Positions 35,831 through 56,850 of a stretch of 64,000 nt of DNA are shown piece by piece. The notes under the pieces were generated by a model that saw only the letters and a list, made by a program, of their open reading frames with translations, had not been told where the DNA came from and made no database searches. Every line of letters begins with the position of its first letter. Within the stretch, counting starts at the first letter, position 1. Location: positions 38,077 to 102,076 of the forward strand of contig NIVC01001788.1 in assembly GCA_002269645.1 (NCBI GenBank), written 5' to 3'. The DNA comes from Macrostomum lignano. Its lineage: Eukaryota. Both the position numbers and the translations under genes were made by a program.

Positions 35831-36034
35831 TGTAGCCCCGTCCTTCTACTTGATTCGACCCTGATAATTCGCACCTTGGTGGTTGACCAATCCGAGAAAT
35901 GCCTTTATGAGATACCCAATTGAGGGCCAGAGAATTTAAACTTTACCACCCCGTCCAGAATTAATCAGTCACACAAGCACCCAAGTCGGTGAGCTGCTGA
36001 GCTACTCAACAAAACAAATAGCGACTCTCACACG

Positions 36035-39000
36035 ATGTCGCAAGCCGGACCGGACAGCTCCAGCGCAGAGTTGAGGGTGAAACGGGCCAAACTTCGGGTG
36101 CTGCAGTTCGCCACGTCAACCAGCGGTCACGGATACAAGAATGTGGCCGAGTCTGAGTCCAGAATCAAAACCATTTTGTGGTCCCTGCTGCTCACTGGAG
36201 CTATCTGCGGCCTGTCCTACCACCTGGCCCTGATCTCAGTCAAGTACTTCGCCTACCAGAAGCGGGTGATCACCAACAACGTGCTGGAGCCGCTGCACTT
36301 TCCTAAAGTGGCCATCTGTCCCACCAGCTACTTTTCCAGCTACCTGATGACCCAGCCGGGTAACTGGGTAGTGCGCGACCTGCACAATCAGCTGTTCAAC
36401 TTGACCTCGCCGTATTTTGGCGTAGCCGAAGAAGATCGTCGAGAGGCGGTGGCGGACAAGGCTCTGCTGGACGCCTACCTGGAGGGCCGTCTGCCAGAGC
36501 TGGCCAATGTGACCACCGCTCTGGACTCGGTGATGCTCACCTGCAGCTTCAACTGGCGCTCGTGCAGCGCGGCGAATTTCACTGCGGTGGCCTCGGATCG
36601 GTACGGCATCTGCTTCGTGTTCGAGCCGACTGGATCCAGCGCCTGGGTGAGCTGAGCAGTTCTAAAGGGTGTCAGAGGGGGCTGCTGGTAGATTGACCGA
36701 TGTTTGGTGTCACTGTGACTCACTTTTTGGGCATTAAAGTGATTCATTTGTCATTACCATGACTCATTCTCAGTATCATCGGTGTGATTCATTCTCAGCA
36801 TCATCGGTGTGATTCATTCTCAGCATCATCGGTGTGATTCATTCTCAGCATCATCGGTGTGATTCATTCTCAGCATCATCGGTGTGACTCATTCTCAGCA
36901 TCATCGGTGTGACTCATTCTCAGTATCATCAGTGTGACTAATTCTCAGTATCATCGGTGTGACCTATTTTCAGTATCATCTACCCTGACTCATTTTCAGT
37001 ATCATCTACCCTAGCTGACTCATTTTCAGTTATCATCTACCCTGACTCATTTTCAGTATCATCTACCCTAGCTGACTCATTTTCAGTTATCATCTACCCT
37101 GAATCATTTTCAGTATCATCTACCCTAGCTGACTCATTTTCAGTTATCATCTACCCTGACTCATTTTCAGTATCATCTACCCTAGCTGACTCATTTTCAG
37201 TTATCATCTACCCTGACTCATTTTCAGTTATCATCTACCCTGACTCATTTTCAGTTATCATCTACCCTGACTCATTTTCAGTTATCATCTACCCTGAATA
37301 ATTTACAGTTATCATCTACCCTGACTCATTTTCAGTTATCATCTACCCTGAATAATTTACAGTTATCATCTACCCTGACTCATTTTCAGTTATCATCTAC
37401 CCTGACTCATTTTCAGTTATCATCTACCCTGACTCATTTTCAGTTATCATCTACCCTGACTCATTTTCAGTTATCATCTACCCTGACTCATTTTCAGTTA
37501 TCATCTACCCTGACTCATTTTCAGTTATCATCTACCCTGAATAATTTACAGTTATCATCTACCCTGACTCATTTTCAGTTATCATCTACCCTGAATAATT
37601 TACAGTTATCATCTACCCTGACTCATTTTCAGTTAACATCTACCCTAGCTGACTCATTTTCAGTTATCATCTAACCCTGACTCATTTTCAGTTATCATCT
37701 ACCCTGACTCATTTTCAGTTATCATCTACCCTGACTCATTTTCAGTTATCATCTACCCTGACTCATTTTCAGTTATCATCTACCCTGACTCATTTTCAGT
37801 TATCATCTACCCTGACTCATTTTCAGTTATCATCTACCCTGACTCATTTTCAGTTATCATCTACCCTGACTCATTTTCAGCATCACCACAGCTCATTTTC
37901 CCTACCATAGCCATTCCATAGCATCAGCATTCCGAATACACCGATAGTCAAATTTAAACGAGAAAAGATTTCCTGTCTCAGAAAATCTCCCACACATTGA
38001 AAAAGCGCTCATCGTCAGAAATTCTCATTAATCCATAGGGATAATGTAGAGTCATGACGAAAGTCAACTGCAGCCCGTTTGTGTATTCAAAACCCCTGCT
38101 GCAAACACAGGTGTAGCTCAGGATCTGGGCTAGCTAGCTATATCGTACTATATTGATCGTTGAGCAGGGAGCTATATGAGCAAATATTTTTGTTCAGCTG
38201 GTCCGGAGCCCGGACCAAAGTTTGCTTTAAAGTGCATAAGTTTATAGTAATAATTATTATTTATGAATATTGAGAGTTCCTTTGCGTCTCGACTGAGCCA
38301 TTTCATACGAAGTTTTTGTCTGGCGCGTCATTTGCATCGATTATGTCTATTTTCATACAGAGTGCGCCTTATTTTCATAGACGGTGACTCATTTTACTAG
38401 ATGGCGCCTCATTTTACTAGATGGCGCCTCATTTTATTAGATGGCGCCTCATTTTCGTAGATGGCATCTCATTTTCATAGATAGCGCCTCATTTTACTGG
38501 ATGGCGCCTTATTTTACTAGATGGCGCCTCATTTTCGTAGGTAGCGCCTCATTTTACTGGATGGCGCCTGATTTTACTAGATGGCGCCTCATTTTATTAG
38601 ATGAAGTCACATTTTCATAGATGGCGCCTCATTTTACTAGATGGTGTCTCATTTTCGTAGATGGCAACTCATTTTACTGGATGGCGCCTCATTTTCGTAG
38701 ATGGCGCTTCATTTTCGTAGATGGATTCCTCATTTTACTAGATGACGCCTCATTTTCGTAGATGGCGCCTGATTTTACTACATGGCGCCTCACTTTACTA
38801 GATGAAGTCATATTTTTTTAGATGGCGCCTCATTTTATTAGATGAAGTCTCATTTTCGTAGATGATGATTTCGTAGATAGCGCCTCAATTTGATACAGAG
38901 GGCGCCCCATCTTCATAGGCCTTGCGAACCCGCCCGCAGGCCTACGGCGGCTACGACAACGGCCTGACCCTCTCGCTGGCCTACGAAGGCCTGAAGGACA

Positions 39001-40880
39001 GCTACTTCAGCACCTCGACACGGTACACTCGGGGCTACGCCTTCCTGCTGACCCCTTACGACAAGTTCACCAACTTCTTTCGGGCGGCGCCAGTGCCGGC
39101 GCCCGCTGGCCACCGCACGGACATCGGCCTGATGGTCGAGCGCACCAAACGGATGACCACCATCAACGACCCGTGCACCAAGCACCATCAGGCTGTCAAC
39201 TTTGACGGCTCCTCCGAGAACTACGACTACGACACGGTGAACTGCGTCGACATGGCGTTGAACTCGGCGATCAAAACCGCCTGCGGCTGCGTCACGGACA
39301 ACCTGCCGATTCCGCTGCCGCTGCAGCGGGACAGACGCTGCAGCCGGTTGAATTTCACCCAACTGGCCGGGGCGCCGCCGCGGATCAACTCCTTCGACCG
39401 GATGATGCTGGACAAAGCTTGCGTCGACAATCAGCTACGATTTAACGACGATCTGACAGTCTACGGACGGCTGGTGTCCGCCTGTCAGAAGGCCTGCAAA
39501 GAGGAGGGCATTGTGGCCCACGCCGCCACAACGGCTCTGCCAACAACCTCTGCGGGCAGCGGCGGCACTGCTGGCAGTCAGTGGACCGGCGACGTTGAGC
39601 GACTGCTGCTGCAGACCTGGCAGAGGGCGCCCGACCGGTCCTTCATTCCAGCGCTGATCAACGTCAGCTCAGCAGGCGGCAAGATGCTCAGCGGTATATC
39701 GGCCAGCGACCACGTGGTTCAAGCCAACATCTACTTCCTGTCCTCTAGGGTTACCCTGTTCGAGGAGGACTGGCAATATCCATTGAGAGCTTCCTGTCTG
39801 AGGCTGGCGGAGTGATTGGTGAGCTGACCAGGCCGGGAAGTTGGTTGGGGATATGTACAGTTGGTTGAGGATATGTACAGTTGGTTGGGGACATGTACAG
39901 TTGGTTGAGGATATGTACAGTTGGTTGGGGATATGTACAATTGGTTGAGGATATGTACAGTTGGTTGGGGATATGTACAGTTGGTTGGGGACATGTACAG
40001 TTGGTTAAGGATATGTACAGTTGGTTGGGGATATGTACAGTTGGTTGGGGACATGTACAGTTGGTTGAGGATATGTACAGTGGGTTGGGGTTATGCACAG
40101 TTGGTCGGGGATATGTACAGTTGGTTGGGGATATGTACAGTTGGTTGGGGACATGTACAGTTGTTTGGGGATATGTACAGTTGGTTGGGGATATGTACAG
40201 TTGGTTGGGGACATGTACAGTTGGTTGAGGATATGTACAGTGGGTTGGGGTTATGCACAGTTGGTCGGGGATATGTACAGTTGGTTGGGGATATGTACAG
40301 TTGGTTGGGGACATGTACAGTTGGTTGGGGACATGTACAGTTGGTTGAGGATATGTACAGTGGGTTGGGGTTATGCACAGTTGGTCGGGGATATGTACAG
40401 TTGGTTGGGGATATGTACAGTTGGTTGGGGACATGTACAGTTGGTTGGGGACATGTACAGTTGGTTGAGGATATGTACAGTGGGTTGGGGTTATGCACAG
40501 TTGGTCGGGGATATGTACAGTGTTGGCTGTGGTCAAAGAACACAATCGAAACACAAAATTGGCCCGATGCTTGTCGTGCGATTATCCAAGGCAGTGCATG
40601 ACAGAGAACGTCAAGGTTGCTGTGCATACCTTTCGTGCCCGTTCAGGGGACAGTCTGGTAAACTAATTTAGCATCAACTACACTTGGTTGAATAACTAAT
40701 TCTGCCTCGCCAGGTCTCTGGGTCGGAGCCTCCGTCCTAACCATGCTGGAATTCGTAGAACTACTCGTTGGCCTAATCGCGATAGGGTTCAACATCCGAT
40801 CCGCTAAATGCCACGCTGCTGGCCGAGCTGACAGCACGGAGCTGGTGGAAGCTACTGCCGCAGTGAACAAGGCGGCCTAA
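36035..40880 (+). CDS. DEG/ENaC-family ion channel, exons 36035-36646, 38919-39818 and 40714-40880 (~559 aa), with an apparent 1-nt deletion at ~39780
   Basis: FATSTSGHG, TM1, FPKVAICP, CSFNWRSC..YGICFVF, GLTLSL, Cys-rich thumb, and TM2 FLSEAGGVIGLWVGASVLTMLEF with the GxS filter. GT-AG junctions are in phase once one C is restored at 39780-39781. Confidence 0.9.
36770..37890. repeat. Intronic minisatellites: 25-bp (tgattcattctcagcatcatcggtg) then 27-bp (ctgactcattttcagttatcatctacc)
   Basis: Tandem units in DEG/ENaC intron 1. Confidence 0.94.
38390..38918. repeat. Intronic 20-bp minisatellite (atggcgcctcattttactag)
   Basis: About 24 degenerate units ending at the exon-2 acceptor. Confidence 0.9.
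39840..40520. repeat. Intronic 20-bp minisatellite (tgtacagttggttggggata)
   Basis: About 34 units in DEG/ENaC intron 2. Confidence 0.95.
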
Positions 40881-40997
40881 CTTTCTGAGAATAAATGAAC
40901 CCGATTCAGCGGGTGATCCGATTAAACGGGGTGAAATTTACAGTGCTGGTACTCCTAGCAGGGGTTTAATCATGATTTTTTCTTTCATTTGAATGCT

Positions 40998-41998
40998 GCG
41001 CCAGCACCAGGGGCTTTAGCACCAGGGGCTTTAGCACCAGGGGCTTTAGCACCAGGGGCTTTAGCAACAGGGGCTTTAGCAACAGGGGCACCAGCACTAG
41101 GGGCGCCAGCACCAGGGGCGCCAGCACCAGGGGCACCAGCACCAGGGGCGCCAGCACCAGGGGCGCCAGCACCAGGGGCGCCAGCACCAGGGGCGCCAGC
41201 ACCAGGGGCGCCAGCAACAGGGGCGCCAGCACCAGGGGCGCCAGCACCAGGGGCGCCAGCACCAGGGGCGCCAGCACCAGGGGCGCCAGCACCAGGGGCG
41301 CCAGCACCAGGGGCGCCAGCAACAGGGGCGCCAGCACCAGGGGCGCCAGCACCAGGGGCGCCAGCACCAGGGGCGCCAGCACCAGGGGCGCCAGCAACAG
41401 GGGCGCCAGCACCAGGGGCGCCAGCACCAGGGGCTTTAGCACCAGGGGCTTTAGCAACAGGGGCGCCAGCAACAGGGGCACCAGCACTAGGGGCGCCAGC
41501 ACCAGGGGCGCCAGCACCAGGGGCACCAGCACCAGGGGCGCCAGCACCAGGGGCGCCAGCACCAGGGGCGCCAGCACCAGGGGCGCCAGCACCAGGGGCG
41601 CCAGCACCAGGGGCGCCAGCACCAGGGGCGCCAGCACCAGGGGCGCCAGCACCAGGGGCGCCAGCACCAGGGGCGCCAGCACCAGGGGCGCCAGCACCAG
41701 GGGCGCCAGCACCAGGGGCGCCAGCACCAGGGGCGCCAGCACCAGGGGCGCCAGCACCAGGGGCGCCAGCACCAGGGGCGCCAGCACCAGGGGCGCCAGC
41801 ACCAGGGGCGCCAGCACCAGGGGCGCCAGCACCAGGGGCGCCAGCACCAGGGCGCCAGCACCAGGGGCGCCAGCACCAGGGGCGCCAGCACCAGGGGCGC
41901 CAGCACCAGGGGCGCCAGCACCAGGGGCGCCAGCACCAGGGGCGCCAGCACCAGGGGCGCCAGCACCAGGGGCGCCAGCACCAGGGGCGCCAGCAACA
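40998..41998. repeat. 15-bp minisatellite (ccagcaccaggggcg)
   Basis: About 66 units; source of the spurious GAPAP and VLAPL ORFs. Confidence 0.97.
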
Positions 41999-42499
41999 GG
42001 ACAAGCCCCTTAACAGTTTCTAACAAATATTCTTGAGACATAGCTGAGCAGTAGCACTGTAAAGTCACTTTTTATTGCATCACCCAGTTTTAATTTTTCT
42101 TTCAACATTAAATGATGAATAAAAATAAAATATTATTAATAATAATAAGCTAATAATTGACACATTAAATACAGTCTTTTATGCAGTTAATTGAGCTATA
42201 AAACTATTTATTACTATTCAATGATTTCTACCGTGTTAATGAGAAACGGACTCAAATTTGAAAAAAAAACATGGCTACTTTTTCTTGTTAACAAAATTGA
42301 AAATTGAAAATTAAATTTCCAAACTGTGACTCAAATATCTATTTATTAATAAACTAAACAAAATGCAGAATACTAGTACACTAGTACAAAAACCCGAGTT
42401 TAAAAATGCGCTTTTGAAGTAATAAAGCATTTACCAAATTAAATGTCTTCACATTTGGTCTTTGTCACTCCTGCATAACCTTTCATAATATGTCACTCC

Positions 42500-42985: not shown

Positions 42986-43465
42986 TCAGCAGCAGAGTGC
43001 CAGCTCAGGCGGGTCGCGGTCGGGCTCAGGCCAGCCGCAGTCGCCGAGGTAAATAAGGCGCAGACAGACGTCAACCCGTCCGAACCGATCTCGCACCCGG
43101 CGCATTCTTTCAATGTCGCAGCTCAAAACGTCGGCATCGTCTTGAGGAGTCCAGACCGGCAGGCCCGTGGAGCGAAGGGCGCCGCCAGACGCCAGCACGA
43201 ACAGCGCCTCGGCTAGAACACCGTGACAGGCGTGCAATACAAAAACGGCGTGCTCCAAGTTGATGTCGAAGGTGAACATCAGGCTGAGCAGCGGGCCGCT
43301 GGCCGGGACAGCGCCGCCTGAGCCTGTCTCAGACCTGCGGCTGTGATTGAGATCATCCACCACTTGGAGAGCTGAATAAGAGTAGCTCTGGCTGTTGGTG
43401 CTGGCGATGCTGTTGTTGTTGTTGTTGACTTGGCAGAGTCGGCTGCGGCGGCTACCGGTTGAGGC
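42986..43465 (-). CDS. Rap1/TERF2IP C-terminal (RCT) domain-like coding exon
   Basis: LMFTFDINLEHAVFVLHACHGVLAEALFVLASG..TGLPVWTPQDDADVL..RVRDRFGRVDVCLRLIYL resembles the human RAP1 RCT as recalled (LMEKFNLDLSTVTQAFLKNSGELEAT..GYPIWSRQDDIDL..KKFGAQNVARRIEF). The frame is open back to acceptor cacacag at 43466 (phase 0). Confidence 0.65.
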   Translation of the reverse strand, partial: ASTGSRRSRLCQVNNNNNSIASTNSQSYSYSALQVVDDLNHSRRSETGSGGAVPASGPLLSLMFTFDINLEHAVFVLHACHGVLAEALFVLASGGALRSTGLPVWTPQDDADVLSCDIERMRRVRDRFGRVDVCLRLIYLGDCGWPEPDRDPPELALCC

Positions 43466-43499
43466 CTGTGTGGTGAAGGGTTCAGGATGAAAGGTGATG

Positions 43500-43850
43500 G
43501 CTTACAGGCTCTGCGATGAAAGCTTACAGACTCTGCGATGAAAGCTTACAGACTCTGCGATGATAGCTTACAGACTATGCGATGAAAGCTTACAGGCTCT
43601 GCGGTGATAGCTTACAGGCTCTGCGATGATAGCTTACAGGCTCTGCGATGAAAGCTTACAGGCTCTGTGATGATAGCTTACAGGCTCTGTGATGATAGCT
43701 TACAGGCTCTGCGATGATAGCTTACAGACTATGCGATGAAAGCTTACAGACTATGCGATGAAAGCTTACAGGCTCTGCGGTGATAGCTTACAGGCTCTGC
43801 GATGAAAGCTTACAGGCTCTGCGATGATAGCTTACAGGCTCTGCGATGAG
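43500..43850. repeat. 22-bp minisatellite (gcttacaggctctgcgatgaaa)
   Basis: About 16 tandem units. Confidence 0.93.
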
Positions 43851-44531
43851 CTGACTGACAGGATTTGCAGTGAAAGGATCAGGAGCTGACTGACAGGATC
43901 AGGAGCTGACAGGATAAGGAGTAAGGTTCAGGATGTGTTACTATGGAAACGCATTCTATTAAATCAATGCAACACTGTAGAACAGCTCCAGTGACAGACA
44001 GACAAACAGAGCTACTCAAATGAACTGAATTACTAGAGTGACAGGTACGTTGCCCATAGCAACACGTCCGTCGCCTGATAATGTGGGTAGAATTGACTGC
44101 GCACGCCATAGGCGAACCTAAATGAATATTGACTGAATCTTTTATGCGTTTGACTAAGAATGCATTAAATTAATTAACTTGACAATAGAATAACCAGATG
44201 AAATTAATAATTTCCGTGTTTGTATCATATATTTATGCAGAAAATATTTGCAATCCAAATCGAGTCTATTATATTAGGTGGGTATATTTAATGTTGGGTT
44301 GCACTAAACTTGTTTAAAGGCACATGAAAATAAAGTAACTACGAAATTTTCATGCTTTCTTAGAATGAAATTTAGACGAAAGTATTACTGTAATATTTCT
44401 TTTGGCAATTAAAACTTCTTGAACTTGTTGGATTGCATGGAATCAGACATAAAGAACCGAACAATGACAGCAAGAGATAAGTAAAATTTAACTAAGGATA
44501 ATTGGGCACATTTACAGAACAGATAGACAAG

Positions 44532-44565
<34 letters not shown>

Positions 44566-45581
44566 AAAGATGAACAGAGAAAGACAGACATACAGACAGG
44601 TCAACAGAATAATCTGATATCACTACTTGCACACCCGACAGTAATTCGAGAATAGGTACGGGAGAAAAAGAATTATCTAGCAAACAAGAACCCACCCACA
44701 CACACACCTAAGAGAAGCCAACAGGCATGTCACCTGTTTCCTAGTCCTCGCCTTCATGACAAACAGTTCTCGAATTGTATTACAATATTTGCACAGGACG
44801 CTTACAGAAAAGGCGCACAAACATTTACTACGAGTATATAGCAGATATATAGGTACAGGTAATTCAATACATTCAATATGAGTAATTCCTCTATTTTCTA
44901 ATATCCTCTATTAAGCATTGAGAACAAATTAAAATAAGTCACCGGTTAAAACTTAGGGGCATCACGTAGAGGAAAAAAACTATATATGGCACTCGCAATT
45001 AAAGTTGTGAAAACTCTACTCTGTTTTCAGTAGTTTGTCTGCGCAGCGGCACTTAAATTCAATGTGGGAGCTAAAATGTCCTTTCCTTACTCGGCCAGGG
45101 TTTGCGCCTCAGGAGCATATGGGGTTGAGAATGAATAACGAGCATTTAACTCGGTGTACACAAGTGACTATGAGGCCCAATCTGGCTCAGCCAATGAGAG
45201 AGCAGTAAGAAGAGAGGCAAAAGTTAGACGGACGAAACTTCAGCCTGGGGAGACAGACCCAATTTGGCTCAGCCAATGAGAGAGCAGTAAAGAGAGAGGT
45301 CAAAATTAGCTAACCGGTTATCGGCCTGACTGGGGGCTGGGTCACCACCAACTTTTCTCTCTTGCCCGCTGTGAACACGCACTAGATTTGGGTGCAGCTT
45401 CAACCAGGGTGAAGATGCTAATTTAGTGGGTCTGCTTGTAAAAAGCCAGAGACGATCGTTGCAGCTTAAAAAACTTTAATAATCCTGTAGGATTGAAAAC
45501 TTACTGAAGGAGTAGATAAATGCATTTTTGCGGGTGACATATCCAGTTATTGTTTTATCTGTGGGGTACACACTCATAAAA

Positions 45582-46034
45582 TCAAGTGGGCCGCAGACCG
45601 CCAGTAGCCCTGTGAACCCAGTCCAGGTATTTTGACAAGCCGCCAATCACTGGAACAGCCAGCACTTCCGGTACACTATACGGATGATTTGACGCAACAT
45701 AGTCAGCCAGTTCCGGCAACAGAGCTAACCGGGTTTTTACAATCATTAACGATTCCGGATCCTTGCGCACCTGACCTTCCCAGCCGTACACGGAGGTGAC
45801 GCTGGGCAGCACGTTAACGCAGGCGGCCAATTCTTTAGCCACTAGAGCGCTAGCTAAACTTTCGGCTTCGTCAGATGAGGGTGTTGTAATGTAAACAACT
45901 GAATAGTTGCCATGGTGACTGGAGACGGTGGCAAAACTATAGGTGGCGCGTCTGCCCACAATGAGGCAGAGCAGATACCAAAAGCCTACAAAGGCCAGAA
46001 ACGTTGGTAGCCAGCGGATTGCTTGTCTCGTCTC
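45582..46034 (-). CDS. CUTA: CutA homolog with an N-terminal hydrophobic segment; start codon not within this exon
   Basis: YSVVYITTPSSDEAESLASALVAKELAACVNVLPSVTSVYGWEGQV..ESLMIVKT..HPYSVPEVLAVPV..YLDWV. Acceptor tttttattacag ends at 46035 (phase 0). Confidence 0.93.
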   Translation of the reverse strand, partial: ETRQAIRWLPTFLAFVGFWYLLCLIVGRRATYSFATVSSHHGNYSVVYITTPSSDEAESLASALVAKELAACVNVLPSVTSVYGWEGQVRKDPESLMIVKTRLALLPELADYVASNHPYSVPEVLAVPVIGGLSKYLDWVHRATGGLRPT

Positions 46035-46639
46035 CTGTAATAAAAAATACCGAGAAAACGATTTGCACAACTTTTTTTTCAAAGTAGCAAGTATGAGCTT
46101 TTATATAGTCTATTTTTTACAGAAAAAAACACGAAGGAATTCGGCAATACACTACTTAATTTTCAACAGTAGATAGAAAAGGTTTTTGATACTGAAATTG
46201 ACAAAACTATTACAATTAAAATGTATTTACAAGCATAACTAATAATGGTGTAAATATTCCGTATATATTTGTTTAGTTAGAGATTAATTATGCACACAAT
46301 CAGCGATATACACAAGTCTGTAAATGTTAGGAGTTACAAAATGGCACAAATCTAAAATGAACTATAGTTATCATCAAAATGGCTAAACGAAGTTCTATGT
46401 GATTAGTAATTCTAGACACACACATTGAGCTGCAAGCGGCAATAATGACCATAAAATGCATGACTTTTTTGTTATCGTTTTAACGCAAATGAAGTGATGA
46501 GCCAATGAGAGAATATTCAAGGTAAATAGGAAAATGCCAAAGAATGGGTTAATAATTAATAGCCTATATTATAGAATACGCTAAACACAACAGAGTAGCA
46601 GATTGTGACGATAAAATTTCCTATTTTAAAAACCCTTAA

Positions 46640-47995
46640 GAATCTTATTTTCCATACGCATCTCAATCCAAATCTTAATCACCAGATCCCCATCTCAATC
46701 CCAATCCCAATCATCACCTCAATATTAATCCCAATCACCACCCTTATCCTGATCCCACCTCATTCTGATCCCCACTTCATTATGCTCTCCATCCCAATTC
46801 TGATCCCTATCTCAATCCTGATCCCCCATCTCAATCCTGATCCCCATCTCAATCCTGATCCCCATCTCAATCCTGATCCCCATCTCAATCCTGATCCCCA
46901 TCTCAATCTTGAATCCCATCTCAATCCTGATCCCCATCTCAATCTTGAATCCCATCTCAATCCTGATACCTATCTTAATCTTGATTCCCATCTCAATCCT
47001 GATACCTATCTTAATCTTGATTCCCATCTCAATCCTGATACCTATCTTAATCTTGATTCCCATCTCAATCCTGATACCTATCTTAATTTTGATTCCCATC
47101 TCAATCTTGAATCCCATCTCAATCCTGATACCTATCTTAATCTTGATTCCCATCTCAATCCTGATCCCTATCTTAATCTTGATTCCCATCTCAATCCTGA
47201 TACCTATCTTAATCTTGATTCCCATCTCAATCCTGATACCTATCTTAATTTTGATTCCCATCTCAATCCTGATCCCTATCTTAGTTTTGATTCCCATCTC
47301 AATCTTGAATCCCATCTCAATCCTGATCCCTATCTTAATTTTGATTCCCATCTCAATCTTGAATCCCATCTCAATCCTGATCCCTATCTTAATTTTGATT
47401 CCCATCTCAATCTTGAATCCCATCTCAATCCTGATCCCTATCTTAATTTTGATTCCCATCTCAATCTTGAATCCCATCTCAATCCTGATCCCTATCTTAA
47501 TTTTGATTCCCATCTCAATCTTGAATCCCATCTCAATCCTGATCCCTATCTTAATTTTGATTCACATCTCAATCTTGAATCCCATCTCAATCCTGATCCC
47601 TATCTTAATTTTGATTCCCATCTCAATCCTGATCCCTATCTTAATCTTGAATCCCATCTCAATCCTGATCCCTATCTTAGTTTTGATTCCCATCTCAATC
47701 TTGAATCCCATCTCAATCCTGATCCCTATCTTAATTTTGATTCCCATCTCAATCTTGAATCCCATCTCAATCCTGATCCCTATCTTAATTTTGATTCCCA
47801 TCTCAATCTTGAATCCCATCTCAATCCTGATCCCTATCTTAATTTTGATTCACATTCTAATTCTGATCTCCATTCCAATATTTATCCCCATCCCCAACCC
47901 TGATCCCCTTCGCAATCCCCATCCCAATCCTGTTCCCCATCCCAATCCTGTTCCCCATCCCAATCCTGATCCCCATCCCAAACCTGATCACACCC
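46640..47995. repeat. 18-bp minisatellite (cccatctcaatcctgatc) with higher-order repeats
   Basis: Tandem variants in 36/54-bp periods; source of the spurious HLNPD and ILIP ORFs. Confidence 0.95.
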
Positions 47996-48142
47996 CAAGA
48001 CTATGGGCTGATCCTAAAATCCTAATACGCTCGTACCAATCTTGAACCCCAATATACGAGAGTACTGATTCCTTTCAGGCCTTCCCAATCATGATCCTGA
48101 TCTCCATTCAAGCAGATCCTGTCATCAAGTCAGCTTCATCAC

Positions 48143-49645
48143 TCAGTGCGGCAGCAGGCGCAGCAGCCGCAGGCACTCCTTGGCCTGCTGGGCGCCGCTC
48201 CTGGCGCAGTCGGGCACGGAGACGCCGTCGTAGGACGCGCCAGCCAGTAGAATCGGCGCTCCAGCCCCGGCCAGTCCGTCTCGCCAATTGACCACCTGTC
48301 CGACGTGTCCGACCGGGTACTGCGGTATGCAGTTCGTTAGCAGGCGACAGTCGGCCGCGACAGGCCTGGAGGCCGAGGGGCCCAGACAGGCGGTCACGTG
48401 ATTAACAGCCAATCGGATGAGACTGTCCGAGCTCAGCCCGGCTATTCGATGGTACCAGGCGCCGCCGAGCATGCAGGTGAGCCTGGCCGATCCGGCCGGC
48501 TGCCTGTCCGGGAACAGGCACGAATCGTACACCACACCGAGCACAGCGGGCTCCCCGCCGGAGGCACCCGAAGGCACCAGATGACCGAAAGCGGGCTCCG
48601 GCACCGGGTTGCCATTGTAAAGCAGGCTGACAATGGCCAGACTGACCCAGGGCAGGCTGGACAGCTCCGGAGTCAGCCGGCCGAGCCGCTCCGGCCACAG
48701 TCTGGCGGCGGAGAAGGCAGGCACGCAGAGGATGACGCCATCGAAGCTGGCCTCGCCAGATACGTCCTTCGTGGTGCTCAGCCGGAGTCCGATTCGACCG
48801 TCGGCCAATCGGCGAAGGCTTTCAACGGCCGAGCCGAAACGGCAGCGAACGTTGGCGTCCTGACGGAGCTTGTCTAGGCACGCCTCGGCCAGGGATCCGA
48901 GGCCGCGTTTCAGCGACCAGACAGCGCACCGGTCGCCTAGCAACGGGTCCGGCGGCGATTTGGATGCGCCCGGAGCTAGCAAGCCCAGCAGGAGGCTGCC
49001 GCGGCGTCGTTCAGCTTCGGGCAGATGCGGGAAAGCGGCAGCGACGCCCAGGTCGGAGAGTCGGCCGGCAAACACGCCGCGGGTCAGCGGGTCGAGCAGA
49101 TAGTCGGTCAGGTCGGGCCCTAGCCGGGACCTGGCGAATTCGTCTAATGATTGGTCCGTGCCTTCGGCTAGAGGCTTAGGCGGCCATTGGCCAGCTAGCC
49201 ATTGGCTGGCCGTCCAGCCAATCAGAGAGCGCTGAAATGGCGGCTTAGATGATACCAAATTCTTAGCCAATAGCTGACCGACAGTTGTCAGCTGGTTGTC
49301 AATGGCAACCAGACGCCTAGCGGCTGCCGGATGGCTAGTAGTCAGGGTCACCAGTTCGTCCTTCAAGCCGGACTGCCTCACCAAGTCCAGCAAGTAGCTG
49401 CCAGACGGAGACGCCCCGCGTATAGTCCTGGGTCCCAGTTCGTACACGCAGCCGGCCGAGTCAGTGGCGGTGCGCACCCAACCGCCTGGCCGGTCGGACT
49501 TGTCCAACAGCCAGATCTCTAGCGGCTGACGGTTGGCGGCCGCTGCCAGCCGAGCCAGGGTGCTGGCGGCTGACAGGCCTGCAATGCCAGCGCCTACAAT
49601 TGCGATGCGAGCGGCTGGTCTGGCGGCGGCTGCTGTAAAAGGCAT
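48143..49645 (-). CDS. PPOX: Protoporphyrinogen oxidase (500 aa, intronless)
   Basis: GAGIAGL FAD motif, GGWVRT, YELGPRTIR, GVFAG, FGHLVP..LGVVYDS, CIPQYPVGH and LAGASYDGVSVPDC. Acceptor tttgcag lies 13 nt upstream of the ATG. Confidence 0.96.
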   Translation of the reverse strand: MPFTAAAARPAARIAIVGAGIAGLSAASTLARLAAAANRQPLEIWLLDKSDRPGGWVRTATDSAGCVYELGPRTIRGASPSGSYLLDLVRQSGLKDELVTLTTSHPAAARRLVAIDNQLTTVGQLLAKNLVSSKPPFQRSLIGWTASQWLAGQWPPKPLAEGTDQSLDEFARSRLGPDLTDYLLDPLTRGVFAGRLSDLGVAAAFPHLPEAERRRGSLLLGLLAPGASKSPPDPLLGDRCAVWSLKRGLGSLAEACLDKLRQDANVRCRFGSAVESLRRLADGRIGLRLSTTKDVSGEASFDGVILCVPAFSAARLWPERLGRLTPELSSLPWVSLAIVSLLYNGNPVPEPAFGHLVPSGASGGEPAVLGVVYDSCLFPDRQPAGSARLTCMLGGAWYHRIAGLSSDSLIRLAVNHVTACLGPSASRPVAADCRLLTNCIPQYPVGHVGQVVNWRDGLAGAGAPILLAGASYDGVSVPDCARSGAQQAKECLRLLRLLPH

Positions 49646-49774
49646 GGCTGGTTAGCCGCTGCAAATTTGGAAAGGGAAACTGGCCTTTTTCAAATTGCCG
49701 TGAAGTTCTTATTAGCTGTAACCTAGGATACGCCATTCACTACTGGCTTATGTGGCATGCGGATGCAGACTTTT

Positions 49775-49910
49775 TATACGGATCTATCTTTCTATCTGTC
49801 TGTCTGTCTATCTATCTATCTGTCTATCTGTCTATCTATCTGTCTATCTATCTGTCTATCTGTCTATCTGTCCGTCTATCTATCTGTCTATCTATCTATT
49901 TGTTATCTAT
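49775..49910. repeat. (TCTA/TCTG)n microsatellite
   Basis: Directly visible between HDDC2-like and PPOX. Confidence 0.95.
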
Positions 49911-50085
49911 CAATATTAATTAAATTGTGTCAACTAAAAATAAAAACCAAGAAAAAACTCGTGCAAACTAAAACGAACTTCCTGACTCATTCTAGTAGTG
50001 GTAGAGTGAATAGTCATCAGACAATAATAGCAAGCCATTCAAATTTAATGCAAACAGAAATTCGCTAGAAACTGAAAAGCTTTAA

Positions 50086-51192
50086 CTAGTGCAACACGTG
50101 TTCGCACACCTGCCGCAGGTAAGACAGACTAATCCGACTAGGCAGTCCGCTAGCCGCGGCAGCAGCTGATGCGCCAGCGCTGCGCGCAGTCAAAGCTACA
50201 TCTAACCAAACTAAATCGCTAAGCAACTGTCCGCTAGCCGAAGCGTCCTTAGCAACCGAATTGGCGGAGTCGAACGGACAGGCCAGGCTATCAGAATCGA
50301 GCAGATCCAGTTTGCTGAAGGCTACAGAGCCGTCATCATAGAAGTTAGCGGAGCCTACAGTGCGAACAAGTTCGGCTGCTCCGGTGTCTGCAAGCATCGG
50401 CAAACAATGCTTAGGCAGGGTCAGCGCTATCAGGCACACCATGTACTGATGACAGCCTAGCGGAACTGGTCCCGGTTGCCAACTGGCTGTGGACGGCAGC
50501 TGTAATGGCATTAATCTCATCTCTTTGTACCTGGAGAACAGAGTCAACTGTTCGAATGGAATCTCAGCACTGTCAGTCTCGCTAGACTTGGCGGATTCAA
50601 CAAAAACATTTGCCGAACGAATTCGACTGGACACACCGCTAATGCTGGTTTTTGACAGACAGGATCGGGTGAACTCGGACAGATTCGGACAGTTTGGCCG
50701 GGTCAATTGGTAATAAGCCGCCTGGCAGCACATGTCTAATCTATCTAATTCTTTAGCTAGACGGGCCTCTACTGTAGCCTGAGCATTGTACTCAGCGAAC
50801 AGGCTAATTAGCTTAGCCGATGACTCCCGGCTCAAATTGGCGGCCATGCTATTCAGTGCGGCCTGTTCGCGTCTGAGCTTCTCGTCCGGCGGCACACCGC
50901 AGTGTGGCGTCAGGTCGCCTACAACAGCTTCGGCCAGATCGTGTACAATGCAGAGCTCTACTAGGCGGTCCTGGTTGGCTCCGGAGCAGCCGGGCCAGGC
51001 TGGCAAGCGGACTGCAGCTTCAGCAGCCATGGACCACATGTGGCTGGCAACAGTTTCCACATTGTTCAGGCCTCGAAGCTGCCAGCCAGTACGCGTGGTA
51101 CGCTTGATATTATCGGCTATGATTAGAAATTTGGCATAGGCGGAGGCTGATGCCTCCTCATCTGTTGTTGAGGGCAGTTGCAGTGAGGTAGA
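50086..51192 (-). CDS. HDDC2: HD-domain 5'-deoxynucleotidase (HDDC2/YGK1-like) with a long C-terminal extension; start codon not within this exon
   Basis: IKRTTRTGW..ETVASHMWSM..LCIVHDLAEAVVGDLTP..EKLRREQAA..EARLAKELDRLDM. The ORF-track N-terminus is AT-rich intron-like sequence; acceptor ccttcag ends at 51193 (phase 0). Confidence 0.88.
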   Translation of the reverse strand, partial: STSLQLPSTTDEEASASAYAKFLIIADNIKRTTRTGWQLRGLNNVETVASHMWSMAAEAAVRLPAWPGCSGANQDRLVELCIVHDLAEAVVGDLTPHCGVPPDEKLRREQAALNSMAANLSRESSAKLISLFAEYNAQATVEARLAKELDRLDMCCQAAYYQLTRPNCPNLSEFTRSCLSKTSISGVSSRIRSANVFVESAKSSETDSAEIPFEQLTLFSRYKEMRLMPLQLPSTASWQPGPVPLGCHQYMVCLIALTLPKHCLPMLADTGAAELVRTVGSANFYDDGSVAFSKLDLLDSDSLACPFDSANSVAKDASASGQLLSDLVWLDVALTARSAGASAAAAASGLPSRISLSYLRQVCEHVLH

Positions 51193-54100
51193 CTGAAGGT
51201 AAATATTTTTGTATGCATATATATAGTTAAAGTCATTGTCACAATCAAAATCCAGTTGGGTAAATTTAATGGTTTTTATGCTTAACATTGGATCTAATCA
51301 AAGATCCAAGCTGTAATTTATGTAGTATTATATTGGGTAGATAATTTGCACAAATATCTATCCTAATTTATATAATTAACAGAATAAAGAGCTTGCAAAA
51401 ACTTTTATTGCCTAGACTTCAGTTTTCTAAGAGATTTCTAATACATCTAAGAGACTTTTAATTCTACCTTAAAGCTGATACCAAAGTTATAATAGCTATT
51501 TGTCTTGTCTTTTAGTCTTTTGATAAATTCTTATGTCCTTTTGCTAACACAAAAATTTTCTACAGTAGGGCTCATGACTAATTCACTAAATACCCTTGAA
51601 GTTGTTACAAGACTAGTCTAAGCATAGATTTTTTAACCTCAATTCTTTAGATTAAATTTTGAGAATAATTATTACATACACTAAGTCTAAATATTAGTCT
51701 GAGAATACGTTTTTGGTGTTTCTAACTTGTTACCTATTAGCATTATTATTTATTGTGACTTCTATCTTATCTCATCTCATCTCTTCCTATAAATATTTTA
51801 GTTATCTAACTATTCAATTTAGATATTGCCAAGATTAGAGAGGGTTATGGCCTTTTTTAACACTATATATATATATAAATATATCTTATTTCATTTTACT
51901 TGGTTTCTCTTGGTAAGTTACTAACAATCTTTGCCCCCCAATGGGGGGGGCATTTGGATAGAATCCTTGTTCTTTACAAATAACAAATAGACAGCAAAAT
52001 AAATCCTATAAATAACTGTACATTCTGTGCATATCTTCAGCTTTATATTTGATTGTGACCTTTGTGGTGGCCTTTGTGCTTTTTGTGATTTTGTGCAATG
52101 CATTATTCTTTTTTTACCATGCAAACTGCATTTTTGTGGCAGTAACTCTGCCATTGTCTGGTCCCAAGCCTGAGAGGGCTGCATTAAGAAAGGAAGAGGA
52201 CTGCATTAAGAAAGGAAGAGGACTGCATTGAATAAACATGCAACTGAATACAGTGGTTGTGGTTTTAAAGACTAAAACAACATGTAGTTTTAGAGATACT
52301 GTGTCAATCATTGCAGCCTCTAAGAATACAAGTCGGAAGGGAAAAAAGTTTCATGCAGGGCATGTATTATTGGCAATTGAGGAAGTGACCAAAAGTTGAC
52401 ATTGTCCCATTGAATAGTTGATGAAATAACCAAGCTTTAAAAGTATCTTATTGGTTGGTTGACAAAACAACCAATATGGGGAACAGGTTGACAATGTGTC
52501 CAGTTAACAAAATGGCAGTTGACGAAATGAATAGGATCTATACCAAATGCCATAACAATGAAATATAGTTCTATAGCACTAAGCTAAGAAGCCAGAGCAA
52601 TATACCTTACCACTAGTTTTTATACTTCATTCCACTGCTTTTTTCTTAGTTGTAGCATATGTTACAAGTAAGAAAGTTTAATTTTAAAAATGTTAAAATG
52701 ATTTACAAAGTATCACAAAATAAAATTTACCACAAAAGTTAAATTGATCACAAAAGTAGATAGTAGCTCCACCCCCTTTTTGTTAATTACAAACTTCAAT
52801 TAAGCATTTTCAACTTCTATTAATTATATATAGTGTCCTAATAGTACAAAATGTGATAGACCTGCAACATTTTTTGTTTTATGTGGCCATTCTGTCAAGT
52901 GGCTGTTCTATATGTGGCTGTTTTGATGGTACCCCTACCAAATTGCTAGGCACCAAAAAGCATAGGCATTGAAAAGTGTAGATACTACTTGCCCCTCCCT
53001 CCCTTTCAAAAATTTTCTAGATCTTTACTTAAGATCTAAGATCTTAACTTAAGATCACTTGAGAAGTTTCTACAAAGGTAGGCCCCCTAAGGAAAAAAAC
53101 AAAGGCAAAAGCAAGTTTAGCTAATTTTTAATTCAAATTTAAATGAGAATTATTTTCATTTGTTATTGTTTCAATAGAACTAAATTTTAGTGTTTTAGGT
53201 AAAACTAAAACTAAAACTTAGGGCCTAAGTAGGTCAAAAGCTCAAAGCTCAAAGATCAAATTAAAAGATGACAATGCTTGATTTGTCAACATTACAAGAT
53301 GGAACATGGTCAAATAAATAGACAAAGTTACCACTTTTATAAAAACAAGTTTTATTTTTTATTTAAATGATTTTATAATTAATTATAATTAATGTTTAAG
53401 TAATAGTAGTAAGAGAAGAGTTAGCTTAAGCAAAATTTTCGAGTCCTGGACACTTCGTCATCTTACCAGTTCGTCATCCAGATGACGAAGTGACCATGGT
53501 TTTTGGACACTTCGTCATCGCAAGATTTCGCAAAGCTGTAAAATTGTTATTCGATTGTTTTTTATACATGTAAATTGTTTCTCAATCAATAGTATGTAAA
53601 ATATAGGATTAAATACACGTTTAGGGATTCAACTTCTCGCTATAATTGGCATCTAAATGCACGCTATATGTGTACAAGTGTTGATTGTAATTTTATTATA
53701 GCTTCGCTTCCACAACCATGTGTGGAGTTGTAACGATGTAGATTTAATTGCGCGTGATATTTCAAAGCGTGAAGAACGAGCATAAACACACTTCGAACGA
53801 ACTTAACGTCTAGCGATTAACGACGATTTAAATAGGGAATTAAAAAAGACAGTAAACGAATAAACAACTGAAAACCGGATTTATTAAACTGCTGATGTAT
53901 CTGTTTTAGTTTGCATAACTGTTATAGCTATTGATGACTTCATATAGTTTAGCTATATTCACTTAGTGAGAAGTTTCAGGGAGACCCCAATTTAAATTAG
54001 GCCCCTATTATTATTCTTTCTTTTCGTAGAACTGGACATCAGGTAAAACGATATTTTAATATAAGTTTTAAAAACAAACCAAAATCTTGCCCAATTAGCT

Positions 54101-55749: not shown

Positions 55750-56850
55750 AGGTCTCTAATCATTAAGGTCTTTGATCCTATAGGTCTAATCCTTTAAGGG
55801 CATGATCCTTCAGGTCTAATCCTTCAGGTCTCTAATTGTTCAGGTCTCTGACTCTTCAGGTCTAATCCTTCAGGTCTCTGATCCTTAAGGTCTAATAACT
55901 CAGGTGCATGATCCTTCAGGTGCATGATCCTTTAGGTCTAATCCTTTAGGTCTCTCAGTCCCTGATCCTACAGGCCTCTGATCTTTCAGGTGCATGATCC
56001 TTTAGGTCTAATCCTTTAGGTCTCTCAGTCCCTGATCCTACAGGCCTCTGATCTTTCAGGTCTGATCCTTCAGGTCCAATACTTCACGTTTATTCTTTCA
56101 GGTCCCTGATCCTTCAGGTTTCTGATCTTTCAGCTCCTTTATACTTCAGGTCCCTGATCCTTCAGGTCCCTGATCCTTCAGGTCCCTGATCCTTCAGGTC
56201 CCTGATCCTTCAGGTCCCTGATCCTTCAGGTCCCTGATCCTTCAGGTCCCTGATCCTTCAGGTCCCTGATCCTTCGGTCCCTGATCCTTCAGGTCCCTGA
56301 TCCTTCAGGTCCCTGATCCTTCAGGTCCCTGATCCTTCAGGTCCCTGATCCTTCAGGTCCCTGATCCTTCAGGTCCCTGATCCTTCAGGTCCCTGATCCT
56401 TCAGGTCCCTGATCCTTCAGGTCCCTGATCCTTCAGTCCCTGATCCTTCAGGTCCCTGATCCTTCAGGTCCCTGATCCTTCAGGTCCCTGATCCTTCAGG
56501 TCCCTGATCCTTCAGGTCCCTGATCCTTCAGGTCCCTGATCCTTCAGGTCCCTGATCCTTCAGGTCCCTGATCCTTCAGGTCCCTGATCCTTCAGGTCCC
56601 TGATCCTTCAGGTCCCTGATCCTTCAGGTCCCTGATCCTTCAGGTCCCTGATCCTTCAGGTCCCTGATCCTTCAGGTCCCTGATCCTTCAGGTCCCTGAT
56701 CCTTCAGGTCCCTGATCCTTCAGGTCCCTGATCCTTTAGGTCTCTTATTCTTCAGGTCTCTGATCCTTCAGGTCTATAATCCTTTAGGTCTATTCACTCA
56801 GGTGCATGATCCTTCAGGTCTTTGATCCTTCAGGTGCATGATCCTTTAGG
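55750..56850. repeat. 16-bp minisatellite (ccttcaggtccctgat) with a homogeneous core and degenerate flanks
   Basis: Near-perfect units at 56150-56730. Confidence 0.96.

What the first reader, a model, noticed from the sequence alone, without database searches (positions are those of the whole stretch)
42986..51192. Candidate trans-spliced operon with AUG-less, phase-0 ORFs (HDDC2-like, PPOX, CUTA, Rap1-RCT)
Seen: four co-oriented single-exon ORFs, each preceded by a splice acceptor. In HDDC2-like (51192), CUTA (46034) and the RCT exon (43465) the frame begins exactly at the acceptor, and the first in-frame Met lies inside the conserved domain. PPOX has its own ATG 13 nt after the acceptor. 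HDDC2-like and PPOX are only ~440 nt apart. Known: flatworm spliced leaders end in AUG, which can serve as the initiator, and SL trans-splicing resolves operons. Inference: a polycistronic unit where the leader supplies the start codon. Alternatives exist: ATG|GTAAAA at 52120-52113 and an MKARTRKQ|gtgaca exon at 44757-44734 could be cis first exons.
Basis: partly seen in the sequence, partly recalled or inferred. Interest (0 to 1): 0.72.

Follow-up and report, generated by a model that had tools for sequence, protein, structure and literature searches.

The report
Flatworm genes started by spliced leader
Four neighbouring Macrostomum lignano genes begin at trans-splice acceptor sites, and at least two have no start codon of their own, so they must take the AUG at the end of the spliced leader; this mechanism is already known in flatworms and the locus is already annotated.

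Summary
The window is contig NIVC01001788.1 of the published Macrostomum lignano Mlig_3_7 assembly (100% identity over 21.5 kb). Four co-oriented single-exon ORFs lie on the minus strand: HDDC2-like, PPOX, CutA and a stand-alone Rap1-RCT-like protein. Each follows a 3' splice site. Three of these sites fit the published M. lignano trans-acceptor motif and coincide with a sharp GC step.

HDDC2 and CutA have no usable ATG of their own, and both acceptors are in phase 0. The published M. lignano leader ends in ...TTGCATG. In two paralogous copies from the same assembly, which was polished with RNA-seq reads, NCAG is replaced by CATG exactly at the HDDC2 and CutA junctions. I read this as an imprint of leader-junction reads.

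GenBank annotates all four CDSs as lacking a start codon. In one paralog they are named g4-g7 of a single transcriptional-unit cluster.

The leader-supplied AUG is well supported for HDDC2 and CutA and plausible for RCT. PPOX uses its own ATG. Co-transcription is supported only indirectly. Both the leader AUG as initiator (Cheng et al. 2006) and M. lignano operons are published, so this is an ordinary new instance of a known kind.

The parts
50086..51192 (-). HDDC2-like ORF with no AUG of its own (368 codons plus stop). It begins at the first base after the acceptor CTTCAG (51198-51193).
   Evidence: Pfam HD_3 E 1.9e-32. Human HDDC2 4DMB E 1.5e-26, with ORF residue 13 aligned to human residue 11. 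First in-frame Met at residue 52. GC change point -7 nt. The CDS annotated on this contig is 5'-partial, 51180-50086. Paralog L002 has CATG in place of TCAG at the junction.
51286..51288 (-). In-frame ATG in the presumed outron, 32 codons upstream of the HDDC2 acceptor (rival start).
   Evidence: The surrounding 150 nt are 27% GC, against 51% downstream.
52113..52120 (-). Candidate cis donor ATG|GTAAAA. [quoted passage not shown]
   Evidence: There are two out-of-frame ATGs within the 34 nt upstream. It lacks the +5 G of the published donor motif GT[G/A]AG. It is not part of the annotated 5'-partial CDS.
49646..49664 (-). PPOX acceptor TTGCAG (49664-49659) and 13-nt 5' UTR (49658-49646).
   Evidence: An in-frame TAA lies inside the 13 nt. 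GC change point -4 nt.
48143..49645 (-). PPOX CDS with its own ATG (500 codons plus stop). The leader AUG would be out of frame and would open a 66-codon overlapping uORF.
   Evidence: Pfam Amino_oxidase E 1.5e-39. uORF computed. The paralog protein is named protoporphyrinogen oxidase in UniRef.
45582..46034 (-). CutA ORF with no AUG of its own (150 codons plus stop). It begins after the acceptor TTACAG (46040-46035). With the leader AUG it reads METRQAIRW followed by a hydrophobic helix and then the CutA1 domain.
   Evidence: Pfam CutA1 E 8.8e-35, residues 46-142. No in-frame ATG between the upstream stop at 46103 and Met97. GC change point -3 nt. Paralog L001 has CATG in place of ACAG at the junction. 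The only CATG|GT on this strand between 46035 and 51191 lies inside the HDDC2 coding sequence, at 50443.
42986..43465 (-). Stand-alone Rap1-RCT-like ORF (159 codons plus stop) after the acceptor ACACAG (43471-43466).
   Evidence: Pfam Rap1_C E 1.3e-4, below threshold. 3K6G E 4.4e-4. Homolog P0130 passes Rap1_C. The CDS annotated in paralog L001 starts exactly at the base equivalent to the acceptor. The CDS on this contig is 43438-42986.
44734..44757 (-). Candidate cis first exon MKARTRKQ|GTGACA for the RCT gene (rival).
   Evidence: It is identical in L001 and L002. The donor lacks the +5 G. It is not included in either annotated RCT CDS; both are 5'-partial.
49659..50085 (-). HDDC2-PPOX spacer, 427 nt, including an (ATCT)n array at 49782-49911. 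About 297 nt after removing the repeat. ATTAAA lies 36 nt after the HDDC2 stop.
46035..48142 (-). PPOX-CutA spacer, 2108 nt, of which 1244 nt are a 54/36-nt satellite (46746-47989). About 864 nt after removing the repeat.
   Evidence: Paralog L002 carries an antisense LINE in this spacer.
43466..45581 (-). CutA-RCT spacer, 2116 nt, with a 22-nt x16 array (43495-43849), further repeats to 43921 and 44514-44599. About 1600 nt after removing the repeats.

Best explanation
This is a run of four ordinary M. lignano housekeeping-type genes: an HDDC2-like HD phosphohydrolase, protoporphyrinogen oxidase, CutA and a small Rap1-RCT-like protein. The 5' end of each mRNA is made by trans-splicing the 35-nt spliced leader (...TTGCATG) onto the acceptors at 51192, 49658, 46034 and 43465.

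For HDDC2-like and CutA, and probably RCT, the leader's terminal AUG is joined in phase 0 to an exon that has no usable ATG. The leader AUG is then the initiation codon, giving MSTSLQ..., METRQAIRW... and MASTGS.... PPOX has its own ATG 13 nt downstream, so the leader AUG is out of frame there and must be bypassed by leaky scanning. The leader AUG has a weak context (U at -3).

The genes are most likely cut out of one polycistronic primary transcript. This is most secure for HDDC2-PPOX, likely for CutA and less certain for RCT.

Shown: the gene identities, acceptor positions, phases, the absence of ATGs, identity with the published contig, and the CATG variants in the paralogs.

Inferred: that the leader is actually joined at these sites, that its AUG is used, and that the genes are co-transcribed.
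For: Organism and leader:
- The window is 100% identical to M. lignano NIVC01001788.1.
- The published single leader ends in ATG.

Sites:
- Three acceptors match [T/C]TNCAG, with a GC change point within 7 nt.
- The three ORFs without an ATG are all in phase 0.

Need for an upstream start:
- The first Met is next to the HD histidine in HDDC2 (residue 52) and at residue 97 of 150 in CutA.
- Human HDDC2 residue 11 aligns with ORF residue 13.

Junction imprint:
- L002 has ...CCTCATG|TCTACC where three copies have ...CCTTCAG|TCTACC.
- L001 has ...ATTCATG|GAGACG where three copies have ...ATTACAG|GAGACG.
- Apart from satellite margins and one homopolymer palindrome, these are the only runs of three consecutive substitutions in about 24.8 kb of aligned positions left after masking tandem repeats in the paralogs.
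- The assembly was Pilon-polished with RNA-seq reads.

Annotation:
- All four CDSs on this contig and in L001 lack a start codon.
- The L001 RCT CDS starts exactly at the acceptor.
- The L001 genes are Mlig011821.g4-g7, and L002 PPOX and CutA are Mlig029022.g1 and g3. The naming scheme derives genes by cutting RNA-seq transcriptional units at trans-splice and poly(A) sites.

Literature and spacing:
- Use of the leader AUG as initiator is established in flatworms (Cheng et al. 2006, cited).
- Repeat-adjusted spacers of 297 and 864 nt pass the published 1-kb operon rule.
Against: - No RNA-seq, 5'-end or proteomic data could be read here, so every RNA-level statement is indirect.
- The name prefix marks a 95%-identity cluster of transcriptional units, not strictly a single unit.
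- The CutA-RCT spacer is about 1.6 kb after repeat removal, above the 1-kb rule. The PPOX-CutA spacer tolerates a 5.6-kb antisense LINE in L002.
- The RCT acceptor lacks the motif and a GC step. Its first 62 codons carry all six differences between the copies (2 synonymous, 4 nonsynonymous).
- For HDDC2, the candidate cis exon at 52120 also ends in TTGCATG, so the CATG imprint does not separate cis from trans for that gene.
- The annotated CDS starts on this contig lie 12-27 nt downstream of the acceptors. I could not explain this offset.
Confidence: 0.72

Rival explanations
1. All four genes are trans-spliced and the leader AUG is used as described. However, they are separate monocistronic units, each with its own promoter in the 0.4-2.1 kb spacers. 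In that case it is a gene cluster, not an operon.
For: About 60% of leader-trans-spliced M. lignano genes are not in operons. Two spacers are about 2.1 kb. The CutA-RCT spacer stays at about 1.6 kb after repeat removal. L002 tolerates a LINE insertion between PPOX and CutA. The name prefix is a cluster label.
Against: Four unrelated genes share one transcriptional-unit prefix with consecutive numbers g4-g7 in L001. PPOX and CutA also share a prefix in L002. The HDDC2-PPOX gap is only 427 nt.
Confidence: 0.22
2. Cis-spliced first exons supply the start codons. The exon ending ...TTGCATG|GTAAAA at 52120 would serve HDDC2 and give the same protein. The exon MKARTRKQ|GTGACA at 44757-44734 would serve RCT.
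For: Both sites exist, are in phase 0 and are conserved in the paralogs. For HDDC2 the CATG imprint would fit equally well.
Against: Both donors lack the +5 G of the published donor motif. The 52120 exon has two out-of-frame ATGs within 34 nt upstream. RNA-seq-based gene models in two copies give 5'-partial CDSs without these exons, and the L001 RCT CDS starts exactly at the acceptor. No such exon exists for CutA.
Confidence: 0.07
3. The leader plays no role in translation. HDDC2 starts at the genomic ATG 51288 on an unspliced transcript, and RCT starts at its internal Met63.
For: The HDDC2 frame is open from 51288. RCT Met63 lies only about one residue inside the Rap1_C profile, and the upstream 62 codons look weakly constrained.
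Against: The 32 extra HDDC2 codons lie in 27%-GC sequence upstream of a motif-perfect acceptor. They are not needed to match the N-terminus of human HDDC2. This cannot apply to CutA, which has no upstream ATG. Homolog P0130 and human RAP1 both extend N-terminal of the position equivalent to Met63.
Confidence: 0.04

Closest known systems
[quoted passage not shown]
   Same: The leader ends in AUG. The acceptor is in phase 0 with an ORF that lacks its own start. The conserved N-terminal residues can only be translated from the leader AUG.
   Different: That work was done in Schistosoma mansoni, where the AUG was in frame in 28% of trans-spliced transcripts and more than 40 cDNAs required it. I found no open-access paper that analyses leader-AUG use in M. 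lignano. Here the evidence is genomic and indirect.
M. lignano spliced-leader operons and transcriptional units (Wudarski et al. 2017, PMC5730564; Ustyantsev & Berezikov 2021, PMC8629364)
   Same: Same organism and same assembly. The genes are co-oriented and trans-spliced, and repeats inflate the spacers. The paralog's genes are numbered inside one transcriptional-unit cluster.
   Different: The typical repeat-adjusted spacer is about 100 bp. Here the spacers are 297, 864 and about 1600 nt, so the last junction falls outside the published rule.
C. elegans SL2-type operons
   Same: Polycistronic pre-mRNA is resolved by trans-splicing at the downstream genes.
   Different: M. lignano has a single leader and no specialised SL2. 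The nematode leaders do not donate an AUG.

Membership tests
mRNA initiated at the spliced-leader AUG (flatworm type) | The organism's leader ends in AUG directly before the donor site. | tested here: met
   The window is M. lignano Mlig_3_7. The published leader is CGGTCTCTTACTGCGAAGACTCAATTTATTGCATG followed by GTAAG. The leader gene itself is not in the window.
mRNA initiated at the spliced-leader AUG (flatworm type) | A trans-splice acceptor lies at the 5' boundary of the ORF. | tested here: met
   Motif and GC change point for HDDC2, PPOX and CutA. The L001 RCT CDS starts at the acceptor. All of this is indirect, because no reads were examined.
mRNA initiated at the spliced-leader AUG (flatworm type) | The acceptor is in phase 0 and no in-frame stop separates the junction from the conserved domain. 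| tested here: met
   The leader-AUG ORFs are 369, 151 and 160 aa for HDDC2, CutA and RCT. PPOX is out of frame, with a 66-aa uORF.
mRNA initiated at the spliced-leader AUG (flatworm type) | The exon has no AUG of its own upstream of essential domain residues. | tested here: met
   HDDC2 Met52 and CutA Met97 are inside the domains. RCT Met63 is at the domain edge, so this feature is only borderline for RCT.
mRNA initiated at the spliced-leader AUG (flatworm type) | Leader-to-exon junctions are seen in RNA, and the protein N-terminus starts at the leader Met. | not testable with these tools
   There is only a proxy: CATG replaces NCAG at the HDDC2 (L002) and CutA (L001) junctions in an assembly polished with RNA-seq reads.
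Spliced-leader-resolved operon | Adjacent genes on the same strand, with the downstream genes trans-spliced. | tested here: met
   Trans-splicing is inferred as described above.
Spliced-leader-resolved operon | Repeat-adjusted intergenic distance below 1 kb (the rule in PMC8629364). | tested here: inconclusive
   Spacers of 297 nt and 864 nt pass. The spacer of about 1600 nt (CutA-RCT) fails. Only tandem repeats were subtracted, not transposons.
Spliced-leader-resolved operon | One promoter and a polycistronic precursor RNA. | not testable with these tools
   Indirect evidence only: the names Mlig011821.g4-g7 and Mlig029022.g1/g3 on the paralogs.
HDDC2 / HD_3 phosphohydrolase | HD_3 domain with the H...HD...D metal ligands. 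| tested here: met
   Pfam E 1.9e-32. 4DMB E 1.5e-26, with SHM, VHDLAE and D aligned. There is an extra 187-aa C-terminal extension with no Pfam match.
Protoporphyrinogen oxidase | Full-length flavin amine-oxidase fold with an N-terminal GxGxxG motif. | tested here: met
   Amino_oxidase covers residues 21-492 (E 1.5e-39) and NAD_binding_8 also matches. UniRef names the paralog PPOX.
CutA1 | CutA1 domain. | tested here: met
   Profile positions 2-98 of 99 matched, E 8.8e-35. 187 homologs found with E <= 1e-10.
Rap1 C-terminal (RCT) domain | Pfam Rap1_C match at or above the gathering score. | tested here: not met
   22.4 bits against a 24.2-bit cut-off. Weak but consistent support comes from 3K6G (E 4.4e-4) and from homolog P0130, which scores 30 bits. 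The AlphaFold2 model was unusable (pLDDT 35). I call it RCT-like.

The most novel reading that the evidence does not exclude
The CATG variants at the HDDC2 (L002) and CutA (L001) junctions might be real genomic alleles rather than polishing artefacts. In that case the acceptor has been overwritten by the last four bases of the leader, which hard-wires the leader's AUG into the genome. That would point to RNA-templated conversion of trans-splice sites and to interconversion between leader-donated and genome-encoded start codons among the copies of this hidden polyploid.
Probability: 0.1. Interest if true: 0.7.

Novelty: new member of a known kind. Interest (0 to 1): 0.3.

Why it matters
For biology, this is a clean worked example rather than a discovery. 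Some M. lignano genes cannot be translated as encoded in the genome, because they depend on the leader's AUG. That dependence explains why GenBank lists them as 5'-partial proteins.

For users of the genome there are two practical points. First, gene models of trans-spliced genes should have the leader Met added when the acceptor is in phase 0. Second, the RNA-seq-polished Mlig_3_7 assembly appears to carry leader-derived CATG at some acceptors. These create false genomic start codons and destroy true splice sites.

Tried and rejected
- Exact-protein look-ups of the window's PPOX and RPLP1 found nothing, because the annotated products have different ends.
- The HDDC2 protein search was swamped by low-complexity candidates and returned only the paralog.
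- The CutA search returned no transcriptome-derived Macrostomum protein that could have shown the leader sequence.
- Rfam and tRNA scans of the window gave nothing.
- No leader RNA gene is in the window or the loci. The best ungapped matches, at 17 of 40 mismatches, are at chance level.
- The element at 52150-52113 is only TTACTGC-N14-TTGCATG|GTAA. It has 19 of 40 mismatches to the leader, and L002 has TTATTGC. I did not accept it as a leader gene.
- AlphaFold2 on the RCT ORF alone gave pLDDT 35, so no fold search was run.
- The Mlig gene ids were not found in paper texts or in the supplements of PMC5816591.
- Cheng et al. 2006 is not held and is cited through.
- A third apparent GCATG variant near 56758 turned out to be a misalignment inside a 16-nt tandem repeat.
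- dN/dS between the copies is uninformative because there are too few differences.
Full report
**Origin of the window.** A protein search with the HDDC2-like ORF returned one hit, a partial protein of Macrostomum lignano. Fetching its contig and two others gave three loci from the Mlig_3_7 assembly, GCA_002269645.1. L003 (NIVC01001788.1, reversed) is 100% identical to the window over 21,497 bases. The window is therefore that published contig, and L003 position = 59640 minus window position. L001 and L002 are paralogous or haplotype copies. They are 95-99% identical in unique sequence, as expected for this hidden polyploid.

**The observation.**
- The minus strand carries four single-exon ORFs.
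- Pfam assigns HD_3 (1.9e-32), Amino_oxidase with NAD_binding_8 (1.5e-39) and CutA1 (8.8e-35).
- The fourth ORF gets a sub-threshold Rap1_C match (1.3e-4; 22.4 bits against a 24.2-bit cut-off).
- The RCT assignment is weak but consistent:
  - The human RAP1 RCT structure 3K6G matches at E 4.4e-4.
  - An exhaustive search of 1.84 billion representatives found only two other relatives.
  - One of them, P0130, is a 110-aa stand-alone protein that passes the Rap1_C threshold.
- The sequences before the four ORFs are CTTCAG|51192, TTGCAG|49658, TTACAG|46034 and ACACAG|43465.
- The published motif at M. lignano trans-splice acceptors is [T/C]TNCAG. The first three sites fit it and the RCT site does not.
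- A likelihood change point for GC content falls 7, 4 and 3 nt from the first three acceptors. For RCT it falls 124 nt downstream.

**Start codons.**
- From the acceptor, the first in-frame Met is residue 52 in HDDC2-like. It directly follows the conserved histidine of the HD motif.
- In CutA the first Met is residue 97 of 150, deep in the domain. In RCT it is residue 63.
- CutA and RCT have no in-frame ATG between the upstream stop and the acceptor.
- HDDC2 has one, at 51288, 32 codons upstream in 27%-GC sequence.
- Human HDDC2 (4DMB) aligns its residue 11 with ORF residue 13. A Met placed at the junction therefore gives an N-terminus of normal length.
- With a junction Met, CutA reads METRQAIRW, then a hydrophobic helix, then the domain. 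That is a plausible signal-anchor N-terminus.
- RCT Met63 aligns with a Met in the first helix of human RAP1 RCT. The homolog P0130 extends about ten residues further N-terminal. An upstream start is therefore likely but not compulsory.

**The leader.**
- M. lignano has a single 35-nt spliced leader, CGGTCTCTTACTGCGAAGACTCAATTTATTGCATG, followed by GTAAG in the leader RNA gene. About 30% of its genes are trans-spliced and about 15% lie in operons.
- Joining the leader in silico gives ORFs of 369, 151 and 160 aa for HDDC2, CutA and RCT.
- For PPOX it gives a 66-codon out-of-frame uORF that overlaps the true ATG. For the two RPLP1 copies elsewhere in the window it gives 11-aa (10 sense codons after the AUG) uORFs.
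- The leader AUG has U at -3, a weak context. Leaky scanning to a gene's own ATG is therefore plausible. This last point is my inference from general knowledge of initiation contexts.

**An unexpected proxy for RNA evidence.**
- I aligned the four junctions across the four copies.
- L002 has ...ACCTCATG|TCTACC at the HDDC2 junction, where the window, L001 and L003 have ...ACCTTCAG|TCTACC.
- L001 has ...TATTCATG|GAGACG at the CutA junction, where the other three have ...TATTACAG|GAGACG.
- In both cases positions -4 to -2 are changed, so that the four bases before the exon become CATG, the last four bases of the leader.
- About 24.8 kb of aligned positions remain after masking tandem repeats. 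In these, the only other runs of three or more consecutive substitutions lie at satellite margins and at one homopolymer palindrome.
- The methods of the genome paper state that the assembly was polished with Pilon using Illumina DNA reads and RNA-seq reads mapped with STAR.
- My inference, at roughly 85-90%, is that reads carrying a short remnant of the leader overwrote the acceptor in these copies.
- Whether this is an artefact or a real allele, it shows that a sequence with CATG immediately before TCTACC... and GAGACG... exists. This is what trans-splicing at 51192 and 46034 predicts.
- For CutA, the only CATG|GT on this strand back to the HDDC2 acceptor lies inside the HDDC2 coding sequence. 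The leader is therefore the only sensible source.
- For HDDC2, the candidate cis exon at 52120 also ends in TTGCATG, so the imprint alone does not exclude it.

**Published gene models.**
- On this contig the annotated CDSs are window 51180-50086, 49639-48143, 46007-45582 and 43438-42986. They start with Q, F, P and L, so none has a start codon.
- In L001 the RCT CDS begins exactly at the base after ACACAG.
- None of the models includes the candidate cis exons at 52120 or 44757-44734. If those exons were included, the ORFs would be complete.
- Both candidate donors lack the +5 G of the published donor motif GT[G/A]AG. The 52120 exon also has two out-of-frame ATGs just upstream.
- I could not explain why the annotated CDS starts on this contig lie 12-27 nt downstream of the acceptors.

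**Operon question.**
- The L001 proteins are named BOX15_Mlig011821g4, g5, g6 and g7. The L002 PPOX and CutA proteins are Mlig029022g1 and g3.
- In this annotation, RNA-seq-assembled transcriptional units were cut into genes at mapped trans-splice and poly(A) sites. Units that are at least 95% identical share a prefix.
- Four unrelated genes with one prefix and consecutive numbers imply that at least one assembled unit spans them.
- This is good indirect evidence for co-transcription but not proof, because assemblers can merge neighbouring genes.
- The spacers are 427, 2108 and 2116 nt. After subtracting tandem repeats they are about 297, 864 and 1600 nt.
- The published rule is below 1 kb after repeat adjustment. 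The first two junctions pass and CutA-RCT does not, although transposon fragments were not subtracted.
- L002 has a complete antisense LINE (endonuclease, RT and RNase H) in the PPOX-CutA spacer. The spacer is therefore not tightly constrained.
- No minus-strand gene lies upstream of HDDC2. A claudin-like gene is divergent at 57433-58245. HDDC2 would therefore be the first gene of the unit.

**Comparison with what is known.**
- Use of the flatworm leader's terminal AUG as initiator methionine was demonstrated in 2006. In S. mansoni it was in frame in 28% of trans-spliced transcripts and more than 40 cDNAs needed it. It is now a recognised class, slORFs.
- Leader trans-splicing and operons in M. 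lignano are published.
- I found no open-access analysis of leader-AUG use in M. lignano itself.
- The locus is therefore a new, clear instance of a known mechanism in an already annotated genome.

**Verdict.**
The leader-supplied AUG is strongly supported for HDDC2 and CutA and plausible for RCT. The operon has only indirect support.
- Interest is modest. The CATG imprint is the one point that goes beyond the expected, and it mainly matters as a caveat about the assembly.

Noticed in passing
L002 8118-8121 and L001 14842-14845 (equivalent to window 51196-51193 and 46038-46035): In these paralogous copies the acceptor NCAG is replaced by CATG, the last four bases of the spliced leader, exactly at the HDDC2 and CutA junctions. 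Mlig_3_7 was Pilon-polished with RNA-seq reads, so this is probably a polishing artefact. It creates false genomic ATGs and destroys real acceptors. If so, it is likely to occur genome-wide.
   Followed up: partly
window 52124-52113 and 4561-4550, minus strand: The 12-mer TTTGCATGGTAA occurs twice on the minus strand, against about 0.04 expected. Its last 11 bases equal the leader's 3' end plus donor (TTGCATG|GTAA). At 52150 there is also TTACTGC exactly 14 nt upstream, as in the leader. No further similarity to the leader or between the two sites was found. It also resembles the octamer ATTTGCAT. Unexplained.
   Followed up: partly
window 49658-49461 (minus); RPLP1 acceptors at 1061 and 2640 (minus): For genes with their own ATG 13-14 nt after the acceptor, the leader AUG is out of frame and opens an overlapping uORF. 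The uORF is 66 codons for PPOX and 11 aa (10 sense codons after the AUG) for both copies of the 60S acidic ribosomal protein (700-1047 and 2279-2626). Frequent bypass of the leader AUG is therefore implied.
   Followed up: partly
window 50505-50499, minus strand, inside the HDDC2-like ORF: An internal TTACAG| in phase 0 precedes LPSTASWQ.... The peptide around it (PLQLPSTA) echoes the N-terminus (SLQLPSTT). The 187-aa C-terminal extension after the HD domain has no Pfam match. An internal trans-splice site that yields a separate C-terminal protein is conceivable but was not tested.
   Followed up: no
L001 about 9940 (equivalent to window about 50987): A 1-nt deletion in a GGCCCGG run breaks the HDDC2 ORF after 76 codons in the L001 copy. 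This explains the 279-aa 'partial' GenBank protein. It could be a homopolymer assembly error or a real pseudogene.
   Followed up: partly
L002 13855-19195: A complete non-LTR retrotransposon is inserted antisense between PPOX and CutA in this copy only. It has a 535-aa ORF1 and a 1246-aa ORF2 with endonuclease, RT and RNase H domains.
   Followed up: partly
window 43357-43277, minus strand: In the RCT leader region an out-of-frame ATG opens a 25-codon uORF. Its TGA stop overlaps the ATG of Met63 (TGATG), an arrangement typical of termination-reinitiation. It may be chance.
   Followed up: no
window 46746-47989; 43495-43849; 40966-42023; 33390-35874; 56680-56840: Large tandem arrays fill much of the intergenic space: a 54/36-nt satellite, a 22-nt x16 array abutting the RCT acceptor, GC-rich arrays that produce long artefactual ORFs, and a 16-nt array. 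About 24.6 kb of the 64-kb window is tandem repeat by TRF.
   Followed up: partly
window 24117-24581 (-); 36035-36655 and 38922-39815 (+); 57433-58245 (+); 7904-8293 (-): Other genes in the window are a bHLH protein (HLH 3.3e-14), two exons of an amiloride-sensitive sodium channel (ASC), a claudin-like protein divergent from the HDDC2 unit, and an HTH fragment of transposase type.
   Followed up: partly
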